Assembly: GCF_006345805.1 (NCBI RefSeq)
Contig: NC_043007.1
Location: 74,276,001-74,340,000 of the forward strand
Reading direction: 5' to 3'
DNA length: 64,000 nucleotides
DNA from: Octopus sinensis
Lineage: Eukaryota
The notes beneath the pieces are model-generated. The model did no database searches and was not told where the DNA came from. It worked only from the letters and a program-made list of their open reading frames with translations. Below, piece after piece: positions 1-63,269 of this stretch. Position numbers and translations under genes: made by a program. Positions within the stretch are counted from its first letter, which is position 1, and the number at the start of each line of letters is the position of its first letter.

Positions 1-91
1 CATAAAAATTATATAAAAATACATAAAAAATATATAAAAAATATATAAAAATATATAAATTCTTCTTGGGACATAACATAGAAAGCATGTT

Positions 92-1569
92 CTATCTGTT
101 TTCTTTAGGGGACCAAAAACGTAACAGAAACTTAGTCACATGTGGGCATGATCCGAAGAGCTCTGTCCTTGTATTTAGACATGTAGTAGGGTCTAAGCTG
201 CTTTTCCAGATAAGCCATCTCTCCATGTCGCATAGACCACACCTTCCGCTGCCGTTAGTATAGGGCTTACATCTGGCCAAAATCTTCCATTGTATGTTAT
301 AATCGACACCTTTATCTCTTAAAGACCAAATATGATTAGACAATTGTGTCGCTTTTCTTTTGTTCCAGTGCCTAAAGCTCAAAGTGTGGTTATTGAACCT
401 GGCCTTGAAATTACCCTCTGTAAGGCCCACGTATTTCTTTGTCGAAACGGTGTCTTTAGTGGTTATAGAGTTTACGGTAGCTTCATATATGATGGTCTTG
501 GACATGCAAGCTCCATTTAGCGGGCACAATTCTTTATTCCTGCATGAACAGCTGTTTTCTTCTTGTGTTTTTTGTATGTTATGTTTGATTATGTTTTTAA
601 AATTGGTAGTTGAACTAAAGCTAATTTTTAAATTGTGTCTATTGAAGAGTTTCCTATAAGTATGGTTAACTGGAAAATGTCTATCTATCAGTGCTAGGAA
701 ATATTTACCTATATTGAAGGCCACCTCGGGTGAATAAGGGGGCGTAAACCAGATGACCTTCCTATTTCTATTATTCCTTTTCTTTACTGTTGGGCTAGTG
801 ATAGGTGTATATTTTATTTTATCGCTAAAACCACTATCTTTTAAAGCCTTATTATAAACTGGGGCAACGCTATTGAAGGTGTCCTCATCAGATGAGAGGC
901 TAGAAATCCTCTTACTAATATTTTTAACTAAATTTTTGAATACTATAGGGGGATGGCATGAACCTACATTAATATAACTTAGTCTATCATTGGGTTTCCT
1001 ATAAGGCTTATAAATATTCTTATTAAGATCTAAGGAAACGTCTAAGAAATTGACAACCGTCAAGTTAGTATCTATAGTTATACTAAGTCCGAAGTGCTTC
1101 ATTAACTGGATAAGATCCTTCCTAAAACGATCTTGTGCTGGTCCATTTGTATTAGCTGTTAAGGCGAGGGCATCATCTTTGTAGATGGCGAAATGTACGT
1201 TAGGGAATGTCTTACCTAAGGTATCTAGGAGAAAAAGTCCAATTAGATCACAGATGCCTGCCCCATCATATGAACCCATGCTCACATCGAAAGCGCCCTC
1301 TGTGTCGGTGTTTTTTACCCACTTTGCGTCCTCACTGAAAAGTAAGGTCTTTCTAGCATGGAAGATTATTTCCTTATCATTGGTACTAATTTCTATGAAG
1401 TCACTAGCGAAGATGAGGGCTTTATCTAGCAGTTCTTTAGAGATAGAGGCATAAAAATCAACAATATTAATTGTGTAAACCTCGCTTTTTTCTTATTCTT
1501 AATAGCTTTAAACCAGTCTACGACTTCTATACTATTGGACCATTGTACTAGCCTAGTATCGGTCTTAAT
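92..1569 (-). pseudogene. Penelope-like RT-GIY-YIG ORF, 5'-truncated, with one frameshift
   Basis: The frame of track ORF 92..1285 stays open upstream through ..IVDFYASISKELLDKALIFASDF..HARKTLLF..FDV. Upstream RT sequence (VQWSNSIEVVDWFKAIKNKKKARFTQL) is in a shifted frame, implying a 1-bp deletion near 1467 (GAT to AT). There is no N-terminus because the inversion junction is at 1569/1570. Confidence 0.85.
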
Positions 1570-2275
1570 TAGCCCAACAGTAAAGAAAAGGAATAATAGA
1601 AATAGGAAGGTCATCTGGTTTACGCCCCCTTATTCACCCGAGGTGGCCTTCAATATAGGTAAATATTTCCTAGCACTGATAGATAGACATTTTCCAGTTA
1701 ACCATACTTATAGGAAACTCTTCAATAGACACAATTTAAAAATTAGTTTTAGTTCAACTACCAATTTTAAAAACATAATCAAACATAACATACAAAAAAC
1801 ACAAGAAGAAAACAGCTGTTCATGCAGGAATAAAGAATTGTGCCCGCTAAATGGAGCTTGCATGTCCAAGACCATCATATATGAAGCTACCGTAAACTCT
1901 ATAACCACTAAAGACACCGTTTCGACAAAGAAATACGTGGGCCTTACAGAGGGTAATTTCAAGGCCAGGTTCATTAACCACACTTTGAGCTTTAGGCACT
2001 GGAACAAAAGAAAAGCGACACAATTGTCTAATCATATTTGGTCTTTAAGAGATAAAGGTGTCGATTATAACATACAATGGAAGATTTTGGCCAGATGTAA
2101 GCCCTATACTAACGGCAGCGGAAGGTGCGGTCTATGCGACATGGAGAGATGGCTTATCTGGAAAAGCAGCTTAGACCCTACTACATGTCTAAATACAAGG
2201 ACAGAGCTTTTCGGATCATGCCCACATGTGACTAAGTTTCTGTTACGTTTTTGGTCCCCTAAAGAAAACAGATAG
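1570..2275 (+). pseudogene. Inverted duplicate of the PLE C-terminal GIY-YIG endonuclease coding region
   Basis: From SPTVKKRNNR to the stop, the protein matches the minus-strand copy except for N>I. Confidence 0.85.
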
Positions 2276-2479
2276 AACATGCTTTCTATGTTATGTCCCA
2301 AGAAGAATTTATATATTTTTATATATTTTTTATATATTTTTTATATATTTTTTATGTATTTTTATATAATTTTTATGACGAAAAATGCGAGCGATGTATA
2401 AGTACGCAGGCAAGCAGAGTTATAACAGAGTAATTTCCCTTTATTTAACGGTATTTTTTCATAACGTTTTCAAATAGCC

Positions 2480-2542
2480 AGATAACCGAAGAGATGGTGT
2501 TGTGGATTTCCACTTCGGCATCTGAAACTCAGAGTTTTATCT
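2480..2542 (+). ncRNA. Minimal type I hammerhead-like motif at PLE terminus
   Basis: Stem I AGATAA/TTATCT. Core CCGAAGA (U4C variant). Stem II GATG/CATC with an inner GTGGA/TCCAC hairpin, then an extra T before GAAA. Palindromic stem III ACTC-A-GAGT. Cleavage triplet GTT. Confidence 0.65.
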
Positions 2543-2571
2543 TGACTACCGAGTAATGTAACATATTGTAT

Positions 2572-2604
<33 letters not shown>

Positions 2605-2607
<3 letters not shown>

Positions 2608-2854
2608 CTAGGGTCACCTACATTGATTGAGATAAGAGCTAAAAAGCCTTACTGCTGTAGTTAAAACACAATTGTATACATATGTACTGACAGAGACTGT
2701 AATCTCCCATAAACACTGGTAACCTGTGCTTTTGGGTGATTACAGTCCCTGTCAGTACATATGTATACAATTATGTGTTTTAACTACTGCATCAGAGCAT
2801 CATAGCTTTTTCACTCTTATTTCTAACAATATATGTGTTCTAACACCCTAGTCA
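2605..2854. mobile_element. Foldback element with TGACTAGGGT/ACCCTAGTCA termini
   Basis: Terminal inverted repeat plus a ~48-bp inner inverted repeat (2657-2704 / 2738-2787), starting at a (TA)n tract. Shares termini and the ATAAGAGCTAAAA motif with 45797-45902. Confidence 0.65.
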
Positions 2855-5802: not shown

Positions 5803-6028
5803 AGCTGGCAGAAACGGTAGCATGCCAGGCAAAATGCATAGCTGTATTTTGTCTGCCATTATGTTCTGAGTTCATATTCCGCCGAGGTCGACTTTGCCTT
5901 TCATCCTTTTGGGGTCGATAAATTAAGTACCAGTTACGCACTGGGCTCGATATAATCGACTTAATCCGTTTGTCTGTCCTTGTTTGTCCTCTCTGTGTTT
6001 AGCCCCTTGTGGGTAGTAAAGAAATAGG
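5803..6028 (+). mobile_element. tRNA-derived SINE family B (representative copy)
   Basis: Head AGCTGGCAGAAACGGTAGCATGCC..GTTCTGAGTTCA(A/T)ATTCCGCC. Other copies or fragments at about 3136-3300, 3375-3560, 11960-12140, 13349-13567, 20462-20872 (tandem pair), 28425-28630, 39578-39800, 40945-41162, 43908-44133, 56590-56755 and 62993-63190. Confidence 0.8.
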
Positions 6029-7389: not shown

Positions 7390-7432
7390 TCCAGACTGAT
7401 GAAGGGCAACAACCCTGGAACTAGTCTCTGGA
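7390..7432 (+). ncRNA. Minimal hammerhead-like motif, one core substitution
   Basis: TCCAGA-CTGATGA-AGGG caacaa CCCT-GGAA-C TA G-TC-TCTGGA. Stems I, II and III all pair, but GAAA is GGAA. Confidence 0.65.
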
Positions 7433-10340: not shown

Positions 10341-13225
10341 TTTAAAAAATAGTTAATTTCAGAGAAATCTGCAGTTGCAAATGTGATGAGTTTTGGTATT
10401 AGTAATGAGATGAAGTACTGGTATTTATATTGAAGTTGAGCTTACATATTTATGAAGTGAACTCATGATGGCCTTTGCCAGCTGGTGCATTTGAAATGAG
10501 ATTATGATGCTTTCCGCTAGCTGGAAAGGCATACTCATTGAAATGGACACTGCATAACAGGATCTTGGTAGCTGGAGGATCAGTATCAGGAGTGATGCAT
10601 CACAGCTGGTCAGCTGTTCTCTTTAGTGGGAAACTCTAGAAATTAATTCTTTAATGACACTCATAAATATAGCATTTGATCAAAGCTTCTGACAAGGCAG
10701 CTTCGAGCTTTAAAGTCTGATTGATGTACTAACATCATTTGGATCATCAGGGTGAGTGTATTTGGAAAATAAATTAAAAAGATTCTGTATCTGATACTAA
10801 AAGAGGAATATTTGATAAAAAAATATCATGCTCACTAATGTGAAAAATTTTGATGTACGATACACAACAATAAAGAACATATTTTCTCTTTCATATTTAT
10901 TACTTCTCTTTTATTTTCTATGTACCATTAGAAAGTATTACACACATGCACACACACACACACGCACACACACACACACGCTTGCGCGTGCACACACACA
11001 CACATGCACATACATATATTATATTCCTTTATCTCAGCAACATTTCCTGTTCACACTACATGTATAGCAAAAGAACTGTACTTTATGAATATATGAATTA
11101 CACCAATGACTGTTCAAACATATTCATATGTGTAACACTCTGTTTACGCTACATGTTAACTCGAATAGCTTTCTTTTTTATGAATGTTACAAGTGAAAAA
11201 TGTTTTTTTTATTTTGCATCGATTGCTGTCTCATTCAAACCTGGATACATACTGTTTAGCCATATTGAATACCTGCACAACATAGGCTGGGTAACATCTA
11301 TTTCTGATGGTACACTGGAAATAAAAGAGAACTTTTATTTGTGTGTGTATGTGTATATTTGTGCGTATTTATGTTTGTGTGTGTGTGCATGTGTAATTCT
11401 TTCTAATAGCTCATGGGCAAAAAGGAGAGCTTATTATGTACCATATTTGATGACATATAAGATGCACTTTTTACCCCAAATATGACTCAAAAAATCCCCC
11501 AAGGTCCTATGTGCAAAGTTGAGCTTCACATCTGATTTAATACACTAAAAACTTTTTATCCTGAATATGTGCTTCTCAAACTGGGATGCATCTAATATGC
11601 CAATGTATCTTTTATGTTACCAGTCATTGGTGTAATTCATATATTCAGTAACTCAATGGAATTGAGATATAGCAAATTAATGTCTCATTCAACATAAACA
11701 TGAGTTGTGCTGAAACTAACTAAACAAAGAAAGCAATCAATTCTACCAATTCCTTATTCTGAAGAGAAAGATTTGTTCCATTTTGAATCGTATTTATACA
11801 GCCAGTTCATTGCTAAGAGTACTGTTTCACTGGTCTAATCAAACATTGGAAAATGGATAACTAAAAGATAACTTCCCTTTGAAGGAAGTTGCTTCCCTTG
11901 AATTTTTGCATAAGGTAAATTTTTGCAAAAAATAAATCAACAGGAATATATTGGTTTCAAATTTTGGTACAGAGCCAGCAAACTTTTAGGAGTGGGGTAA
12001 GTCGATTTGATTGACCCCAGTGTTCAACTGGTACTTGTTTTTATCAACCCTGAAAGGAAGAAAGGCAAAGACAACCTCAGTAGAATTTGAACTCAGAACA
12101 TTTTGCCCAGTGTGCAAATGATTTTGTCTGCTGACCACCTTATAGGACATCAATAATATTGTTAAAACATTAGCTGATGCTGCGGACGACTTTACTAATA
12201 GATGTTGGTATATATTCTCAATGTTTCGATGAGAAGGAAGCTAAAATAAATATTGGTTTTCACTTAAAGTTGATATATCATCAGAACCTGAATTTCAGAC
12301 TAAAAACTAATAAAGTCAAATGCCAAATAGCAATGTACATCAACAAAGAATAAAGGAGAGCCATAAATCCAAAAGACAAGGGGCAGTTGGGAGAGCGCCA
12401 ATAAAACAAGAATTTGATCTGAAATCTTGACACATCTCATAGCTTGTGATTTTGTTGTTACTTCCTGTAGTGACCTACCAATGCAAAAATATTTACTTAT
12501 TGGGTCTTAAACAAACAGCCAAATGTGTCAGTTTGACCATTCTAATCATAACTCATCTTTATAACAACTTTTATAAAAACAGACAAAGACAGGTCATTTA
12601 ATCAGTCAATGCCTAGCTTTTGAGTCAGGAAGACATCATCTAAACCCCTTGCGGGTCCATATATAATTTTATTGTTAAAATTCTTTTGTGATAAACTGTT
12701 TATACTTCTACAATGCTTGAAATATTTTTTCAATTTTTATACAATTCCTAATAATATCTAATTCTAAAAATAGAATATTTTAAACAAGAAGCAAATTAGC
12801 TAGTTAAGGAAATTTTTAGAAGAGACAAAAGCAGTAATTATACTGAGAAGTAATGGTTATCACTACTTAAACACAGCTGTTCTGTAGGAACTGATATTAC
12901 TGCTATTTTAACCCAAGCTGGTCACCTCCTCCAGCTGGTTATTTGATGCAATCTGCACCTAATATATATTGCAAGTAGGGGAGTGAACTCCTACCATCTT
13001 CCAGCCACAAAATCACCAGACTGTACAGTTTAGACCTCTTTGTGGTTATCATCAGTGGTGGATGTTCATCCACTAGAGATAATAGTAGTTCACTCCAGCT
13101 CGCAATATATAGAAGACAAGAGACACACAGACACTGATCTTGCAACAAGCAAATTAGTTAGTTAAGAAAATCTCTATAAGAGATGAAAGCAGTAATTATA
13201 TTAAGTAATGTTTACCACCACTTAA

Positions 13226-13680
13226 CCTTTTCATTAACAAAACCCAGCCAAAACCAGCTCTGGCTCTGTAGTACAAATGTCTTGTTTTCATAAGTTTTGA
13301 ATTAAAATCTTTCACCAAACTTTAGTCACAATCTATGTTCCTAACACTTATTTCTTTATTGCCCACAAGAGTGGACAAAGGACAGGCAAAGGGATTAAGT
13401 CGATTACATTGACCCCAGTGCGTAACTGGTACTTAGTTTATCAACCCCGAAAGGATGTAAGGCAAAGTTGACCTCGGCGGAATTTGAACTCAGAACGTAA
13501 CGACAGACAAACTACCGCTAAGCATTTTGCCCGGCATGCTAACGTTTCTGCCAGCTCGCCGCCTTCTTATGTTCCTAACACTAGCTGAATGATAACTTAG
13601 TTATTTTACTAAATTCTTTGTTATATTTAAAAGGATTGGAAGAAACAGAGTATCTCAAGATAAATACAGTAATGAAAGGG
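13226..13680. mobile_element. piggyBac-type MITE (TTAA target) carrying a nested SINE B
   Basis: TTAA|CCTTTTCATTAAC...GTAATGAAAGGG|TTAA. The SINE at 13349-13567 is flanked by the 15-bp duplication TATGTTCCTAACACT (13334-13348 and 13568-13582). Confidence 0.75.
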
Positions 13681-17136: not shown

Positions 17137-49600
<32,464 letters not shown>

Positions 49601-51450: not shown

Positions 51451-51983
51451 GTTCATGGCTCGTAGGACAACTTGCTGTGCTAACCTTGGATCATAGGGTG
51501 ACCCGCTGTGCTTGAGGAGACCTATTGAGTCAAGTACATTAACATCAACATCAAAATAAAAATCAAATGGAAATTGTAGTTGAGATACCCGTACTAGTGG
51601 CATGTAAAAAGCACCATCCGATCGTGGCCGTTGCCAGCCTCGCCTGGCCCCCGTGCTGGTGGAATGTAAAAAGCACCATCTGATCATGGCCGTTTGCCAG
51701 CCTCGTCTGGCACATAAAAAGCACCCACTACACTCACAGAGTGGCTGGCGTTAGGAAGGGCATCCAGCCGTAGAAACACTGCCAGATCAGACTGGGCCTG
51801 GTGCAGCATTCTGGCTTCCCAGACCCCAGTTGAACCATCCAACCCATGCTAGCATGGAAAGCGGAGGCTAAAGGATGATGATGATGATGATATTATTATA
51901 TATATAATATATATATATATATAATATATATATATATATATACATATATATATACATATAATATACATATATATATATATATC

Positions 51984-55778: not shown

Positions 55779-57729
55779 GCATGTTTGCATGCCGGTGTGT
55801 TTATGTCCCCATAAGTTAGCGGTTCAGCAAAAAAGAGACCGATAAAATAAATACTAGGCTTACAAAGAATAAGTCCTGGGGTCGATTTACTCGACTAGAA
55901 GGCGGTGCTCCAGCATGGCCACAGTCACATGACTGAAACAAGTAAAAGAGTATATACATATAGTCACTATGAGGATATTTAGACCTCTTATAGGGTTATT
56001 TTAATCCAAGATGCACTGGTTTAATATATTGTATTTTGAAGGGATATTCCTTCAATGAATATATTATAAAATATAAACTATCAAATATTATCAAGTTTGA
56101 AAATGGAGAGATTCAATGGATATAAATTAATTTATCAATTAATTATCACCATTGCCAACAATTGTTTCATTTCACATCCAATTTAAATAACAGAGCATAT
56201 ATAAATATATAAGTTTGCTTTTCAAAATATCTTGGGTGGAAAATTTTCAGGGCATGAAAAAGGGCAATACAGAGATTACATTTTGATGAGTTGAAATACT
56301 CAAATAGACTAATAAAAAATGGAGGGAGAGAAGAAAAACAGAGAGCAACAGAAATGTGTTGGGATTAATGGTTCCACATATCATCCTCCTCCTCATCATC
56401 ATCGTCATTTAACATCCATTTTCTATGCTGGTACGGGTTGGACAGTTTGACAAGAGCTGTCCAGACTCCAATTGTCTGTTTTGGCATGGTTTTCTATGGT
56501 TGGATGCCCTTCCTAGCACCAAACACTTTACAGAGTGTGCTGGGTACCTTTCATGTTCCACCAGCATAGGTACATTTATATATATATTTCTTTATTACCC
56601 ACAAGGGGCTAAACATAGAGGGGACAAACAAGGACAGTCAAAGGTATTAAATCGATTACATCGACCCCAGTGCATAACTGGTACTTAATTTATTGACCCC
56701 GAAAGGATGAAAGACAAAGTCGACCTCAGCGGAATTTGAACTCAGAACGTAACGACATGGCACCAGCACAAGTGCATTTTGCATGGCACCAGCACCTGCA
56801 AAGGGCATGTCTGTATGTATGGATGACCATGATAATACTTAGCATGATGTTTTCTCCTCAAGCACAGCAAATTACCACAACTCCTGGCCCCTTGTCATTT
56901 CCTCAGTGAGGCCCAGCATTTGAAGATCTTTTCTCACCACTTTGTCCCATGTCTTCCTGGGTCTACCCCTTTAAGAGTTGTTGAAGCATGGAACACACTG
57001 CTAGCATCAGTTGTTAGTTGTCAGAGCACTGCATCCTTCAAAACTTCCATGCTTCCTGAGATTCGCCAGTACTGCACCTGATTTTTTTCCCCTCCATACA
57101 CATGCAAGCATGTATCTGACTCATACACTGTTCACCTCCCAGACATTTGTACATTACTGTATAAATTTTATATGCACTTTTGACAAGTAGTGGTGCACCT
57201 GAGCACTGTATACAATAATTTCATTATTATTTTCTTTTTTCCATAGGTTCACCCCACAATTAGAAATCAGCATTTCTTTAAGCAGCTGTCCTCATCCATA
57301 TGCATCAGATGACCTAACCAGTGCAGTTTTTCTCTCTTACACACAACATCTAATGCCTGTTATACCCAGTTGTCCTCTTAAACCATTTACACTCTGTCAT
57401 ATGTGCACACTGACATTACCCATCAAGTGCTGGCTTCATTTCTTTCAAGCCTTCACATGTCCTCTGCAGTCATAGCCCATGTTTCACTGTCATGTGGCGT
57501 AGCATAGCTGTACATACACAGGTATCATACAATCTGCCTTCCACTCTGAGGGGAGGCGAAAGGAGAGAGAGGGAAGGGGAGGTGAAAGGAGTGAGCAAGG
57601 AGGGGAACAAGGAAGAGGGCAAGGAGGGGAGGAGCAGAAAGAGAATGTGGTGATGATGATGATGATACTCTTTAAAAATGTTGATCAGGATTTTTTTACT
57701 TTTTTGTTTCTTCCCAGTAGAGAAACATG

Positions 57730-59660: not shown

Positions 59661-59953
59661 GTATATAAATATGTGTGTGTGTGTGTGTATGTATATAAAT
59701 GCACATATATATATATATGTATGTGTATATACATATGTGTATGTATGTATGTATGTATGTATGTATGTGTGTATGTATGTATGTATGTATGCATGTATGT
59801 ATGTTTGTATGTATATATATATATATATATATCCAATCAAGAACGGCCATAATAGGCCATTCACCCACTAGAAATAACAGCCAAAAAGCTTCAACCGCAA
59901 AATAACATTAATTCCGTAAACCAGGAGAAAATTAAAAAAACATTTACCCTGAA

Positions 59954-60058
59954 ATTCCTTATACGATGCACCGTTTCGTCTATGTTTAATGGTAAACTAA
60001 CCTGATTAAATTAAATCAAGCCATCTACCATAGGCCCTTAGATTCATCAGTAAGGAAT
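59954..60058 (-). ncRNA. Type I hammerhead ribozyme, array unit 1
   Basis: ATTCCTTA-CTGATGA-ATCTA..TAGAC-GAAA-CGGTGCATCG-TA-TAAGGAAT. Confidence 0.8.
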
Positions 60059-60439
60059 AGCCAAATCGGAACAGATATTTTTCACGAGGCATTCACGTCC
60101 ATGCCTCGCCAATATCTGACCTAAAATTTCAAATCGTCGCACTCGCGCCAAATTTATCGGCAGCAAATAAGTATAAGCCGCCGATTCCTTACGGAACTAA
60201 CCAGAAAATTCATAATTAATCAATATAGGAGGCAAAAAAATTTTGTAGAATTCTTTTGCCCCCAGCGGCCTAGTGGGAAAAAATTAAATAGTCATAAACC
60301 ATTTTTAAGTTCAATATCACAATCAAGGACGGCCATAATAGGCCATTCACCCACTAGAAATAACAGCCAAAAAGCTTCAACCGCAAAATAACATTAATTC
60401 CGTAAACCAGGAGAAAATTAAAAAAACATTTACCCTGAA

Positions 60440-60546
60440 ATTCCTTATACGATGCACCGTTTCGTCTACTGTTTAATGGTAAACTAACCTGATTAAATTA
60501 AATCAAGCCAATCTACCATAGGCCCTTAGATTCATCAGTAAGGAAT
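60440..60546 (-). ncRNA. Type I hammerhead ribozyme, array unit 2
   Basis: 8-bp stem I, canonical CUGAUGA/GAAA core, near-palindromic stem III, GUA triplet. Confidence 0.8.
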
Positions 60547-60931
60547 AGCCAAATCGGAACAGATATTTTTCACGAGGCATTCACGTCCATGCCTCGCAAT
60601 ATCTGACCTAAAATTTTCAAATCGTCGCACTCGCCGCCAAATTTATCGGCAGCAAATAAGTATAAGCCGCCGATTCCATTACGGAACTAACCAGAAAATT
60701 CATAATTAATCAATATAGGGAGGCAAAAAAATTTTGTAGAATTCTTTTGCCCCCAGCGGCCTAGTGGGAAAAAATTAAATAGTCATAAACCATTTTTAAG
60801 TTCAATATCACAATCAAGGAACGGCCATAATAGGCCATTCACCCACTAGAAATAACAGCCAAAAAGCTTCAACCGCAAAATAACATTAATTCCGTAAACC
60901 AGGAGAAAATTAAAAAAACATTTACCCTGAA

Positions 60932-61037
60932 ATTCCTTATACGATGCACCGTTTCGTCTACTGTTTAATGGTAAACTAACCTGATTAAATTAAATCAAGC
61001 CAATCTACCATAGGCCTTAGATTCATCAGTAAGGAAT
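60932..61037 (-). ncRNA. Type I hammerhead ribozyme, array unit 3
   Basis: Same fold as unit 2. Confidence 0.8.
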
Positions 61038-61421
61038 AGCCAAATCGGAACAGATATTTTTCACGAGGCATTCACGTCCATGCCTCGCCAATATCTGACC
61101 TAAAATTTTCAAATCGTCGCACTCGCGCCAAATTTATCGGCAGCAAATAAGTATAAGCCGCCGATTCCATTACGGAACTAACCAGAAAATTCATAATTAA
61201 TCAATATAGGGAGGCAAAAAATTTTGTAGAATTCTTTTGCCCCCAGCGGCCTAGTGGGAAAAAATTAAATAGTCATAAACCATTTTTAAGTTCAATATCA
61301 CAATCAAGGAACGGCCATAATAGGCCATTCACCCACTAGAAATAACAGCCAAAAAGCTTCAACCGCAAAATAACATTAATTCCGTAAACCAGGAGAAAAT
61401 TAAAAAAACATTTACCCTGAA

Positions 61422-61528
61422 ATTCCTTATACGATGCACCGTTTCGTCTACTGTTTAATGGTAAACTAACCTGATTAAATTAAATCAAGCCAATCTACCA
61501 TAGGCCCTTAGATTCATCAGTAAGGAAT
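61422..61528 (-). ncRNA. Type I hammerhead ribozyme, array unit 4
   Basis: Same fold as unit 2. Confidence 0.8.
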
Positions 61529-61912
61529 AACCAAATCGGAACAGATATTTTTCACGAGGCATTCACGTCCATGCCTCGCCAATATCTGACCTAAAATTTT
61601 CAAATCGTCGCACTCGCGCCAAATTTATCGGCAGCAAATAAGTATAAGCCGCCGATTCCATTACGGAACTAACCAGAAAATTCATAATAATCAAATAGGG
61701 AGGCAAAAAAATTTTGTAGAATTCTTTTGCCCCCAGCGGCCTAGTGGGAAAAAAAATTAAATAGTCATAAACCATTTTTAAGTTCAATATCACAATCAAG
61801 GAACGGCCATAATAGGCCATTCACCCACTAGAAATAACAGCCAAAAAGCTTCAACCGCAAAATAACATTAATTCCGTAACCAGGAGAAAATTAAAAAAAC
61901 ATTTACCCTGAA

Positions 61913-62018
61913 ATCCTTATACGATGCACCGTTTCGTCTACTGTTTAATGGTAAACTAACCTGATTAAATTAAATCAAGCCAATCTACCATAGGCCCTTA
62001 GATTCATCAGTAAGGAAT
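61913..62018 (-). ncRNA. Type I hammerhead ribozyme, array unit 5
   Basis: Same fold, with one base missing in the stem I 3' strand (TAAGGAT). Confidence 0.75.
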
Positions 62019-62617
62019 AACCAAATCGGAACAGATTTTTTTCACGAGGCATTCAGTCCATGCCTCGCCAATATCTGACCTAAAATTTTCAAATCGTCGC
62101 ACTCGCGCCAAATTTATCGGCAGCAAATAAGTATAAGCCGCCGATTCCATTACGGAACTAACCAGAAAATTCATATTAATCAATATAGGGAGGCAAAAAA
62201 ATTTTGTAGAATTCTTTTGCCCCCAGCGGCCTAGTGGAAAAAATTAAATAGTCATAAACCATTTTTAAGTTCAATATCACAATCAAGGAACGGCCATAAT
62301 AGGCCATTCACCCACTAGAAATAACAGCCAAAAAGCTTCAACCGCAAAATAACATTAATTCCGTAAACCAGGAGAAAATTAAAAAACAACATTTACCCTG
62401 AAATTCCTTATACGATGCACCGTTTCGTCTAAATTTTTTGCCTCCCTATATTGATTAATTATGAATTTTCTGGTTAGTTCCGTAATGGAATCGGCGGCTT
62501 ATACTTATTTGCTGCCGATAAATTTGGCTGCGAGTGCGACGATTTGAAATTTTAGGTCAGATATTGGCGAGGCATGGACGTGAATGCCTCGTGAAAAATA
62601 TCTGTTCCGATTTGGCT

Positions 62618-62724
62618 ATTCCTTACTGATGAATCTAAGGGCCTATGGTAGATTGGCTTGATTTAATTTAATCAGGTTAGTTTACCATTAAACAGTAGAC
62701 GAAATGGTGCATCGTATAAGGAAT
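62618..62724 (+). ncRNA. Type I hammerhead ribozyme, inverted unit
   Basis: ATTCCTTA-CTGATGA-ATCTA..TAGAC-GAAA-TGGTGCATCG-TA-TAAGGAAT. C15.2 is T, giving a U-G wobble. Confidence 0.75.
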
Positions 62725-63187
62725 TTCAGGGTAAATGTTTTTTTTAATTTCTCCTGGTTTACGGAATTAATGTTATTTTGCGGTTGAAGCTTTTGGCTGT
62801 TATTTCTAGTGGGTGAATGGCCTATTATGGCCGTTCCTTGATTGTGATATTGAACTAAAATGGTTTATGACTATTAATTTTTTCCCACTAGGCCGCTGGG
62901 GGCAAAGAATTCTACAAAATTTTTTTGCCTCCCTATATTGATTAATTATATATATATATATATTATATATATATATGTATAATATATATATTTCTTAACT
63001 ACCCACAAGGGGCTAAACACAGAGGGGACAAACAAGGACAGACAAGGGATTAAGTCAATAACATCGACCCCAGTGCGTAACTGGTACTTAATTTATCGAC
63101 CTCGGCAGAATTTGAACTCGGAACGTAACGACAGATGAAATACGGCTACGAATTTCGCCCAGTGTGCTGACGTTTCTACCAGCTCGC

Positions 63188-63269
<82 letters not shown>

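What the first reader, a model, noticed from the sequence alone, without database searches (positions are those of the whole stretch)
59834..62948. 490-bp tandem array with a complete hammerhead ribozyme in every full unit: candidate cephalopod retrozyme / circular-RNA system
Seen: each full unit, read on the minus strand, folds into a type I hammerhead. It has an 8-bp stem I (ATTCCTTA/TAAGGAAT), an intact CUGAUGA and GAAA core, a stem II with TCTA/TAGA closed by A.C and a ~60-nt structured loop, near-palindromic stem III (ACGGTGCATCGT) and a GUA triplet. Predicted cut sites at 59962, 60940, 61430 and 61920 plus 60448 are 486-492 nt apart, so one transcript would release four unit-length monomers. 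The rest of the unit is non-coding and rich in complementary segments (GAGGCAT/ATGCCTC, AGATATT/AATATCT, CCCACTAG/CTAGTGGG, TTCCGTAA/TTACGGAA). Known: tandem hammerhead-bearing repeats that yield monomeric and circular RNAs exist in newts (satellite 2), schistosomes (SM-alpha), crickets (pDo500) and other metazoans (non-LTR retrozymes), and are thought to borrow Penelope-like RT. Inference: this is a young member of that class, with a unit longer than I recall as typical, in the same window as a young PLE. I cannot tell whether this family is already described.
Basis: partly seen in the sequence, partly recalled or inferred. Interest (0 to 1): 0.95.

Follow-up and report, generated by a model that had tools for sequence, protein, structure and literature searches.

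The report
Retrozyme-like hammerhead ribozyme tandem repeat
A 490-bp non-coding repeat, present as five head-to-tail copies plus one inverted copy inside a TA microsatellite, carries a hammerhead self-cleaving RNA motif in every copy and looks like a new family of the known animal "retrozymes" (small circular-RNA retroelements thought to be copied by Penelope-like elements); its activity is untested.

Summary
A 490-bp array (59829-62431, 5.3 copies, 98% identical) carries on the minus strand five complete type I hammerhead motifs. Predicted cut sites are 59962, 60448, 60940, 61430 and 61920. That architecture is the published hallmark of Penelope-like element (PLE) insertions, and the PLE at 1-2377 in this window shows it too. 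The catalytic core is complete and stem I has 8 bp. Helix III is self-complementary over 12 nt, and the unconstrained minimum-energy fold of a two-unit transcript is the classical double hammerhead. Weaknesses: an A.C mismatch at 10.1/11.1 and a 66-nt helix II; no Rfam hammerhead match; only a partial match to a model built from four validated retrozyme hammerheads; no relatives found, so no covariation test; no expression data. Neither the 490-bp unit length nor the five-copy array is unusual for retrozymes. The source organism could not be identified. Verdict: probable new family of metazoan non-LTR retrozymes with an atypical hammerhead. It is a new member of a known kind, of moderate interest.

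The parts
59829..62431 (-). Direct tandem array of the 490-bp unit, 5.3 copies. Its RNA-sense 5' end is at 62431 (unit position ~470, inside the hammerhead). Its 3' end is at 59829 (unit position ~135) and merges into (TA)n.
62431..62948 (+). Inverted copy of 1.06 units (unit positions 206-490 then 1-237, so about 32 nt is present at both ends). It is joined head-to-head (5' end to 5' end) to the array at 62431. Its 3' end merges into (TA)n.
   Evidence: (I1-I13)
61912..62018 (-). Hammerhead copy 1, C3 at 62010, A17 at 61920. Stem I is reduced to 6 bp by a 1-nt deletion.
61422..61528 (-). Hammerhead copy 2, C3 at 61520, A17 at 61430. Stem I 8 bp, helix II 66 nt, helix III ACGG/UCGU with a UGCA loop.
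60932..61037 (-). Hammerhead copy 3, C3 at 61029, A17 at 60940.
60440..60546 (-). Hammerhead copy 4, C3 at 60538, A17 at 60448.
59954..60058 (-). Hammerhead copy 5, C3 at 60050, A17 at 59962. Two 1-nt deletions in helix II.
62403..62431 (-). 5'-truncated hammerhead: AGAC-GAAA-helix III-GUA (A17 at 62411)-stem I 3' strand. The CUGAUGA strand is missing.
62618..62724 (+). Complete hammerhead of the inverted copy, C3 at 62626, A17 at 62716. It reads GAAAU instead of GAAAC, so 15.2-16.2 is a U.G wobble.
59708..59830 (.). (TATG)n/(TA)n microsatellite abutting the 3' end of the minus-sense array.
62947..62991 (.). (TA)n microsatellite abutting the 3' end of the inverted copy.
1..2377 (.). Candidate autonomous partner class. 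Two 5'-truncated PLE copies joined head-to-head: minus copy 1-~1569, plus copy 1570-2377 or further. Arms 2-797 and 1570-2365 are 99% complementary. [quoted passage not shown] (TA)n lies at 2574-2605. There is no sequence similarity to the 490-bp unit.

Best explanation
The locus is one insertion of a non-autonomous, non-coding retroelement of the metazoan non-LTR retrozyme type.

Proposed mechanism, with each step marked as shown, predicted or inferred:
1. The minus strand is transcribed into a multimeric RNA (inferred).
2. Neighbouring hammerhead copies pair through their 12-nt self-complementary helix III segment (ACGGUGCAUCGU) and swap stem I strands, forming a double hammerhead (predicted: it is the unconstrained minimum-energy fold). 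Each core then cleaves 3' of GUA and releases 486-492-nt monomers with 5'-OH and 2',3'-cyclic phosphate ends (established hammerhead chemistry; not shown here).
3. The monomer folds into a compact branched structure in which the 8-bp stem I holds the two ends together. A host RtcB-type tRNA ligase circularises it (by analogy with mussel and axolotl retrozymes).
4. In the monomer, an alternative pairing of UGAUG with CAUCG sequesters the core. It is about 3 kcal/mol more stable than the active fold, which would protect the circle from re-cleavage (predicted).
5. A PLE reverse transcriptase/GIY-YIG endonuclease copies the circular or multimeric RNA by target-primed reverse transcription at a nicked (TA)n tract. 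Priming occurs at internal AU-rich sites of the RNA by microhomology. Priming on both strands of the break gives two 5'-truncated copies joined head-to-head, one of them multimeric (inferred from the architecture).
For: Motif:
- The catalytic core is complete: CUGAUGA, GAAA(C/U), GUA. This satisfies the CUGANGA/GAAAY/RUH criterion used by the de la Pena group.
- The topology is type I with an 8-bp stem I. Stems I and II appear in the free minimum-energy fold of the 126-nt domain (-37.9 kcal/mol, z = -4.4).
- The chance rate at the observed stringency is 1 in 3000 shuffled windows.

Dimer mode:
- The helix III duplex is worth -17.5 kcal/mol, against -0.2 for the hairpin.
- Two domains in trans fold as a double hammerhead at -87.1, against 2 x -37.9.
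- The unconstrained minimum-energy fold (-203.3) of a 641-nt transcript spanning two consecutive units is the double hammerhead.
- A short helix III with a palindromic loop and dimeric action is the published norm for metazoan type I hammerheads (PMC4209133; PMC7229834).

Precedents for the deviations:
- Axolotl HHR_Amex2 has a U.U mismatch at the base of helix II and a GUA site, and it cleaves (22% in 1 h as a monomer, efficiently as a dimer).
- The mussel retrozyme hammerhead has the same UCU/AGA helix II base and GAAAC.

Retrozyme features:
- Tandem array, 36.9% GC, longest stop-free stretch 60 codons.
- Circular monomer -149 kcal/mol, z = -6.4, 58% of bases paired.
- Unit length and copy number fall within published ranges.

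PLE-type insertion:
- Partial tandem, an adjacent inverted 5'-truncated copy and microsatellite flanks. This matches the hallmarks described for PLEs in PMC8557442.
- The PLE at 1-2377 shows the same head-to-head arrangement next to (TA)n.
- The two 3' ends lie at different unit positions (~135 and ~237), each at an AT-rich site. This fits a template without a fixed 3' end.
Against: - No Rfam hammerhead model matches, even on a 161-nt slice.
- A covariance model built from four validated retrozyme hammerheads gives only 11.5 bits (E = 0.65), and the match covers only the 5' 22 nt.
- The G10.1-C11.1 pair, described as highly conserved even in minimal PLE hammerheads, is A.C here.
- Helix II is 66 nt, against about 4 bp plus a loop in canonical motifs, so the usual loop 1-loop 2 contact cannot be assumed.
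- As a single motif, the active fold is 3 kcal/mol less stable than a competing fold.
- All copies are near-identical, so there is no covariation, and no relatives were found anywhere.
- There are no expression data.
- The unit shares no sequence with the PLE in the window, and no hammerhead was found in that PLE's retained 3' part.
- Only one locus was seen, so dispersal in the genome is unproven.
- The head-to-head structure could also arise from DNA-level rearrangement in a microsatellite.
Confidence: 0.69

Rival explanations
1. It is a retrozyme relic. The repeat descends from a hammerhead-bearing element, but the ribozyme is already dead (G10.1 to A, plus a large insertion in helix II). 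The array exists only through reverse transcription of an uncleaved multimer or through DNA-level tandem duplication, and it makes no circular RNA today.
For: - A.C mismatch at 10.1/11.1 in all six copies.
- Rfam and the custom model do not recognise the motif.
- The window holds other clearly decayed hammerhead-like relics.
- The 5' end of the array lies 21 nt upstream of a cut site, so that template was not cleaved there.
Against: - Every other core position is intact in six copies.
- A helix II base mismatch is tolerated in an active axolotl retrozyme.
- The double hammerhead is the predicted ground state of multimeric RNA.
- The copies are 98-100% identical, so the family was active very recently.
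Confidence: 0.2
2. It is an ordinary satellite or tandem duplication in which a hammerhead-like string occurs by chance.
For: - At relaxed stringency, hammerhead-like strings arise by chance at about 0.5 per 64 kb. Even at the observed stringency, the 1-in-3000 rate scales (my arithmetic) to roughly ten or more chance hits in a genome of a few gigabases.
- The first-stage reader selected the window because it looked striking.
Against: - Scaled, the chance of such a motif falling in one given 490-bp unit is about 2.5e-6 (my arithmetic).
- Features not in the descriptor also fit metazoan hammerheads: GAAAC, C15.2-G16.2, a palindromic loop 3 giving a 12-bp dimer helix, and a helix II base shared with the mussel motif.
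- The insertion architecture is that of a retroelement, not of a satellite.
Confidence: 0.04
3. It is a fragment of an autonomous PLE (tandem pseudo-LTRs) rather than a separate non-autonomous element.
For: - PLE pseudo-LTRs carry hammerheads and form tandem/inverted structures.
- In Xenopus, retrozyme families are sister to PLE pseudo-LTRs.
Against: - Five consecutive units with no reverse-transcriptase or endonuclease ORF between them.
- Both ends of the structure run directly into microsatellite.
- No similarity to the PLE in the window.
Confidence: 0.05
4. The array or its inverted junction is an assembly artefact, for example a collapsed or chimeric long-read assembly.
For: Most differences between units are 1-nt indels, which is typical of long-read error.
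Against: - The inverted copy is only 518 bp and is flanked by unique sequence (a microsatellite, then a SINE-like repeat), so it is not a whole-read palindrome.
- The same head-to-head architecture occurs independently in the PLE at the other end of the window.
Confidence: 0.02

Closest known systems
Metazoan non-LTR retrozymes (Cervera & de la Pena 2020, PMC7229834), especially the Mytilus galloprovincialis ~350-390-bp family
   Same: - Tandem non-coding units of low GC, each with a type I hammerhead.
- A highly self-paired predicted circular monomer.
- PLEs present in the same genome.
- The mussel hammerhead shares the helix II base UCU/AGA, GAAAC, and a short helix III with a palindromic loop.
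   Different: - Helix II here is 66 nt (4 bp, an internal loop, then a 19-bp hairpin) instead of 4 bp plus a 5-nt loop.
- 10.1/11.1 is A.C instead of G-C.
- The cut triplet is GUA rather than GUC.
- The unit is 490 bp.
- There is no sequence similarity outside the ribozyme core.
- No expression or cleavage data exist.
Newt satellite 2 / axolotl retrozymes (HHR_Amex1, HHR_Amex2)
   Same: - A weak helix III with a palindromic tetraloop and action as a dimer.
- HHR_Amex2 also has a mismatch (U.U) at the base of helix II and cuts after GUA.
   Different: - The axolotl motifs keep a short helix II and recognisable loop 1-loop 2 nucleotides.
- Their units are 330-350 bp.
- They are a vertebrate lineage with about 1e5 copies.
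pDo500 satellite of Dolichopoda cave crickets
   Same: A tandem unit of about 500 bp with one hammerhead per unit, and a proposed double-hammerhead mode.
   Different: - pDo500 has a compact 49-nt motif with G10.1-C11.1.
- Its conservation and compensatory changes are documented across 12 species. Here no relatives are available.
Minimal hammerheads in PLE pseudo-LTRs (Cervera & de la Pena 2014, PMC4209133)
   Same: - Type I, a larger-than-usual helix II, a poorly defined loop 1, palindromic 15.2-16.2/loop 3, and dimeric action.
- Association with tandem/inverted PLE-type insertions.
   Different: [quoted passage not shown]
- They sit in coding elements.
Double hammerhead of avocado sunblotch viroid (Forster et al. 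1988, as cited in PMC4209133)
   Same: Two adjacent copies in a multimeric RNA form one extended helix III and two active sites. The monomer is predicted to be inactive.
   Different: That is an RNA replicon with ribozymes in both polarities. Here the element is DNA-encoded and the motif is in one polarity only.

Membership tests
Hammerhead ribozyme, type I | Conserved core CUGANGA ... GAAA ... UH, with A15.1-U16.1 | tested here: met
   CUGAUGA, GAAA, A15.1-U16.1 and GUA are present in all six complete copies.
Hammerhead ribozyme, type I | Three helices around the core, with the open end in helix I | tested here: met
   Stem I has 8 bp, helix II has 4 bp plus a 19-bp hairpin, and helix III has 4 bp. 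Stems I and II appear in the free minimum-energy fold. The full active fold is -34.9 against a minimum of -37.9 kcal/mol.
Hammerhead ribozyme, type I | G10.1-C11.1 pair closing helix II | tested here: not met
   A10.1.C11.1 in every copy. An active natural precedent with U.U exists.
Hammerhead ribozyme, type I | Match to curated covariance models (Rfam hammerhead families) at gathering score | tested here: not met
   No hammerhead match at gathering score, at E<=10 over 3.8 kb, or at E<=10 on 161 nt. The custom model R1 gives only a partial match, 11.5 bits.
Hammerhead ribozyme, type I | Tertiary contact between loop 1 and loop 2 | not testable with these tools
   Helix II has an internal loop after about 5 bp, and stem I opens after 8 bp. 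No canonical loop nucleotides can be assigned. The mussel retrozyme motifs also lack them.
Hammerhead ribozyme, type I | Compensatory changes in the stems among relatives | tested here: inconclusive
   The copies are 98-100% identical. The only informative change is C15.2 to U, which keeps a wobble pair. No relatives were found.
Hammerhead ribozyme, type I | Site-specific self-cleavage | not testable with these tools
   This needs in vitro transcription.
Metazoan non-LTR retrozyme | [quoted passage not shown] | tested here: met
   5.3 direct copies plus 1.06 inverted copies of a 490-bp unit. The published range is 51-972 bp, and 75% of families have at most 7 units.
Metazoan non-LTR retrozyme | Non-coding, low GC (<45-50%), no LTRs | tested here: met
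   The longest stop-free stretch is 60 codons. GC is 36.9%. The array runs directly into microsatellite on both sides. Primer-binding site and polypurine tract were not specifically searched.
Metazoan non-LTR retrozyme | Monomer predicted to form a stable, highly self-paired circular RNA | tested here: met
   -149 kcal/mol as a circle, z = -6.4 against 200 dinucleotide shuffles, 58% of bases paired.
Metazoan non-LTR retrozyme | Co-occurrence with PLEs in the genome | tested here: met
   A reverse transcriptase + C-terminal GIY-YIG element lies at 1-2377. The Pfam GIY-YIG match is weak (E = 0.027).
Metazoan non-LTR retrozyme | Many dispersed genomic copies | not testable with these tools
   The source genome is not in any collection I could search. 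Only this locus was seen.
Metazoan non-LTR retrozyme | Expressed as linear and circular monomeric RNA | not testable with these tools
   No transcriptome access.
PLE-type insertion architecture | Partial tandem, an adjacent inverted 5'-truncated copy, and microsatellite target bias | tested here: met
   compared with the description in PMC8557442. The PLE at 1-2377 has the same layout.
Autonomous Penelope-like element | ORF encoding reverse transcriptase and GIY-YIG endonuclease | tested here: not met
   No ORF over 85 aa in the array, and none in the consensus over 60 codons.
Plant LTR retrozyme | Type III hammerheads inside LTRs, with primer-binding site and polypurine tract | tested here: not met
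   The motif is type I and there are no LTRs.

The most novel reading that the evidence does not exclude
This would be a functional hammerhead variant that current models miss. Its helix II is a 66-nt rod, the 10.1/11.1 position is an A.C mismatch, and cleavage depends on the double-hammerhead form. The locus would also be a rare single-insertion snapshot (a multimer plus an inverted 5'-truncated copy inside (TA)n, mirroring a PLE in the same window) showing directly that retrozymes are integrated by PLE machinery through priming on both strands of the target.
Probability: 0.3. Interest if true: 0.55.

Novelty: new member of a known kind. Interest (0 to 1): 0.38.

Why it matters
Hammerhead-bearing tandem repeats that give abundant small circular RNAs are known from cnidarians to amphibians. 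Two points remain open: how far the ribozyme can drift and still work, and which enzyme copies these RNAs back into DNA.

This locus bears on both.
- If the motif cleaves, standard Rfam-based and descriptor-based surveys undercount retrozymes, because a 66-nt helix II and an A.C closing mismatch defeat them.
- The insertion architecture here is a multimer joined head-to-head to a truncated inverted copy, with both 3' ends in a TA microsatellite. It is the same layout as the PLE 58 kb away. This is locus-level support for the PLE-mobilisation hypothesis, which so far rests on co-occurrence and, in Xenopus, on sequence relatedness to PLE pseudo-LTRs.

If the motif is dead, the locus is an ordinary young repeat.

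Tried and rejected
- Rfam scans at gathering score, at E<=10 over 3.8 kb, and at E<=10 on 161 nt. No hammerhead match; only microsatellite-driven miRNA noise.
- A covariance model (R1) built from the four validated retrozyme hammerheads in the PMC7229834 supplement. The candidate scored only 11.5 bits over 22 nt, because the model cannot bridge helix II. The model did find decayed hammerhead-like relics elsewhere in the window.
- Search for relatives by DNA pattern (core plus helix II base). Metagenome contigs gave 16 hits and prokaryotic genomes gave 2. BLAST of the unit against these loci showed nothing beyond short chance matches. Viral contigs gave 0 hits.
- Search for relatives through called ORFs. 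Exact-product look-ups of two array ORFs and of the PLE ORF found nothing. A protein search with all stop-free peptides of the unit concatenated (490 aa) found nothing at E<=0.001.
- Identification of the source organism. The PLE ORF matched at best at 51% identity and a second reverse-transcriptase ORF at best at 45%. The few named hits were a hydrozoan, a mantis shrimp and marine metagenome bins. 'Cephalopod' therefore stays unverified.
- Similarity between the unit and the PLE or any other part of the window: none.
- Alternative registers for helix II (an extra nucleotide after A9, or the proximal AUCUA/UAGAU hairpin). Rejected by inspection, because they displace GAAA or break the helix.
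- My first constrained fold was off by one base in helix III and is superseded.
- Strand-specific stability (-149 against -107 kcal/mol) is not evidence for the hammerhead polarity, because both polarities have z of about -6.4 against their own shuffles.


Full report
**What is there**

Tandem Repeats Finder reports a 490-bp period from 59829 to 62431, with 5.3 copies, 98% matches and 1% indels.

Read on the minus strand, each full unit contains AUUCCUUA-CUGAUGA-A-UCUA-(57 nt)-UAGA-C-GAAA-CGGUGCAUCGU-A|UAAGGAAU. One transcript would therefore release four monomers of 486-492 nt. A sixth GUA site at 62411 belongs to a motif truncated on its 5' side at 62431.

The differences between units are almost all single-base indels.

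The unit is non-coding: the longest stop-free stretch in any frame of a consensus multimer is 60 codons. Its GC content is 36.9%.

The stretch 62431-62948 is not part of the direct array. It is an inverted copy of 1.06 units (unit positions 206-490, then 1-237). It carries its own complete hammerhead on the plus strand, with A17 at 62716.

The RNA-sense 5' ends of the array and of the inverted copy abut at 62431. Both are 5'-truncated, at unit positions ~470 and ~206. Neither truncation point coincides with the ribozyme cut site.

Both RNA-sense 3' ends point outwards and merge into microsatellite. The array ends as ...GAUUGGAUAU|(AU)n at 59829, next to (TATG)n/(TA)n at 59708-59830. The inverted copy ends as ...GAUUAAUUAU|(AU)n at 62948, next to (TA)n at 62947-62991. 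The two 3' ends lie at different positions of the unit (~135 and ~237), each at an AT-rich site.

**Is the hammerhead more than chance?**

I used a descriptor that allows a mismatch at 10.1/11.1 and a helix II of up to 90 nt. In the real window it finds only the six copies.

In 3000 dinucleotide-preserving shuffles of the window it gave one hit at the observed stringency (stem I >=8, II >=4, III >=4). It gave 13 hits at I>=5, II>=4, III>=3. Scaled up, that would still allow roughly ten or more chance hits in a genome of a few gigabases. For one given 490-bp repeat unit, however, the expectation is about 2.5e-6 (both figures are my arithmetic).

Several features not in the descriptor also fit metazoan type I hammerheads:
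- GAAAC with C15.2-G16.2.
- A palindromic loop 3 (UGCA), which makes ACGGUGCAUCGU self-complementary over 12 nt.
- A helix II base (UCU/AGA) identical to that of the experimentally validated mussel retrozyme motif, CUGAUGA-GUCU-UUUGU-AGAC-GAAAC-GCGCGUC|U.

**Folding**

The 126-nt domain folds at -37.9 kcal/mol (z = -4.4), with stems I and II as in the hammerhead. In that fold UGAUG of the core pairs with CAUCG of helix III. The catalytically competent single fold is -34.9, that is 3 kcal/mol less stable (searches had an off-by-one error and are superseded).

As a hairpin, helix III is worth -0.2 kcal/mol. As a duplex between two copies it is worth -17.5. Two domains in trans fold as a double hammerhead at -87.1, against 2 x -37.9.

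The unconstrained minimum-energy structure (-203.3) of a 641-nt transcript spanning two consecutive units is exactly the double hammerhead. It has the 12-bp helix III between units and swapped stem I strands.

This is the active-as-multimer, silent-as-monomer logic described for viroid, newt, axolotl and PLE hammerheads.

The circular monomer folds at -149 kcal/mol (z = -6.4, 58% of bases paired). The complementary polarity has the same z-score, so this says nothing about strand.

**Weak points**

- No Rfam hammerhead family matches at gathering score, at E<=10 over 3.8 kb, or at E<=10 on a 161-nt slice with lax filters.
- A covariance model that I built from the four validated retrozyme hammerheads printed in the supplement of PMC7229834 (coral, mussel, two axolotl) matches only the 5' 22 nt of the candidate, at 11.5 bits and E = 0.65.
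- The reasons are visible. Helix II is 66 nt: an A.C mismatch, then 4 bp, an internal loop, and a 19-bp hairpin containing five G.U pairs. The G10.1-C11.1 pair, described as highly conserved even in minimal PLE motifs, is A.C here.
- There is a natural precedent. Axolotl HHR_Amex2 has a U.U mismatch at the base of helix II and a GUA site, and it cleaves 22% in one hour as a monomer and efficiently as a dimer. The mussel motifs also lack the archetypal loop 1-loop 2 nucleotides, yet they cleave and give abundant circles.
- Activity is therefore plausible but unproven. I put it at roughly 55-60%.

**Link to Penelope-like elements (PLEs)**

[quoted passage not shown] The Pfam GIY-YIG match is weak (E = 0.027). 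The ORF has 164 database homologues at E<=1e-10, the best at 51% identity.

The two copies are joined head-to-head. Their arms at 2-797 and 1570-2365 are 99% complementary. The plus copy is followed by (TA)n at 2574-2605.

Craig et al. (PMC8557442) describe exactly this for PLEs: partial tandems, an inverted 5'-truncated copy adjacent at the 5' end, and insertion bias for microsatellites, with (TA)n among the preferred targets.

The 490-bp repeat shows the same three features. I read this as target-primed reverse transcription on both strands of a break in a TA tract. The template would be a circular or multimeric RNA that has no fixed 3' end and is primed by microhomology. This reading is inferred from the architecture, not shown.

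The unit has no sequence similarity to this PLE. I found no hammerhead in the PLE's retained 3' part. This particular PLE is therefore not shown to be the partner.

**Comparison with what is known**

The class is established: newt satellite 2, Sm-alpha, pDo500, and the non-LTR retrozymes of corals, mussels and axolotl (PMC7229834).

A 2026 preprint (10.64898/2026.07.22.740005) reports retrozyme consensus lengths of 51-972 bp, at most seven units in 75% of families, co-occurrence with PLEs, and relatedness to PLE pseudo-LTRs in Xenopus. pDo500 is about 500 bp. So neither the 490-bp length nor the five-unit array is unusual.

I found no paper on retrozymes or hammerheads in cephalopods. I also could not establish what organism the window comes from.

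**Relatives**

None were found. DNA pattern scans of metagenome, prokaryotic-genome and viral collections gave only chance matches. Exact look-ups of array ORFs and a protein search with all stop-free peptides of the unit gave nothing. Covariation therefore cannot be assessed. The single informative change, C15.2 to U in the inverted copy, keeps a wobble pair.

**Verdict**

The most likely explanation is a young insertion of a new family of metazoan non-LTR retrozymes. Its hammerhead is atypical (very long helix II, A.C at 10.1/11.1) and is predicted to act as a dimer. The insertion architecture points to PLE-type integration. My confidence in this is about 0.7.

The main rival is that the ribozyme is already dead and the array is a relic (about 0.2). 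Chance, a PLE fragment and an assembly artefact are each unlikely.

This is a new member of a known kind, with moderate interest.

Noticed in passing
window 7390-7432 (+), 29474-29503 (+), 13013-13061 (-), 56874-56912 (-): Compact hammerhead-like motifs found by the custom model R1 (24.4, 17.6, 14.9 and 13.3 bits). They have CUGAUGA/CUGAGGA and short helices II, and where helix III is visible it is minimal. They appear decayed: GGAA instead of GAAA at 7390, UAAA at 13013, no stem I at 29474. Rfam does not match 7390. They are probably relics of PLE pseudo-LTRs or older retrozymes. At 7390 and 29474 the first base after CUGAUGA is A, facing U on the other side of helix II.
   Followed up: partly
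window 1-2605: Two 5'-truncated PLE copies are joined head-to-head (arms 2-797 and 1570-2365, 99% complementary), followed by (TA)n at 2574-2605. The ORF at 92-1285 (-) is intact over 397 aa. No hammerhead was detected in the retained 3' untranslated part. The left copy runs off the window.
   Followed up: partly
window 62992-63190, with copies at 5803-6023, 13368-13560, 20473-20873, 39579-39802, 40945-41157, 43910-44131, 56588-56757 and others: An interspersed repeat of about 200 bp (SINE-like; ARAGORN finds no tRNA) with ten or more copies at 72-89% identity. The copy next to the array is itself flanked by (TA)n on both sides.
   Followed up: partly
window 36740-37390 (+): A fragment of another reverse transcriptase (Pfam RVT_1, E = 3e-6, just below the curated cut-off). 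The best database matches are 45% identical.
   Followed up: partly
window 23763-23961, 25350-25499, 51588-51711: Short arrays (2-3 copies) of a 62-68-bp unit with related sequence (..GCCAGRCGAGGCTGGC..GGCCACG..). The same peptide-like strings recur in many spurious ORFs across the window, so this is probably part of a high-copy repeat.
   Followed up: no
window 2663-2779: A near-perfect hairpin: 58-nt arms, 88% complementary, 1 nt apart, just downstream of the PLE and its (TA)n.
   Followed up: no
window 59829-62948: Differences between the repeat units are almost all 1-nt indels, many in homopolymer runs. They may be long-read assembly errors rather than real mutations.
   Followed up: no
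window 62425-62440: The head-to-head junction lies where both partners carry a short shared motif: (G)TAGA in the direct unit and TCTAC, its complement, in the inverted unit. This suggests microhomology at the 5' join, but a few bases are missing relative to a clean crossover.
   Followed up: no
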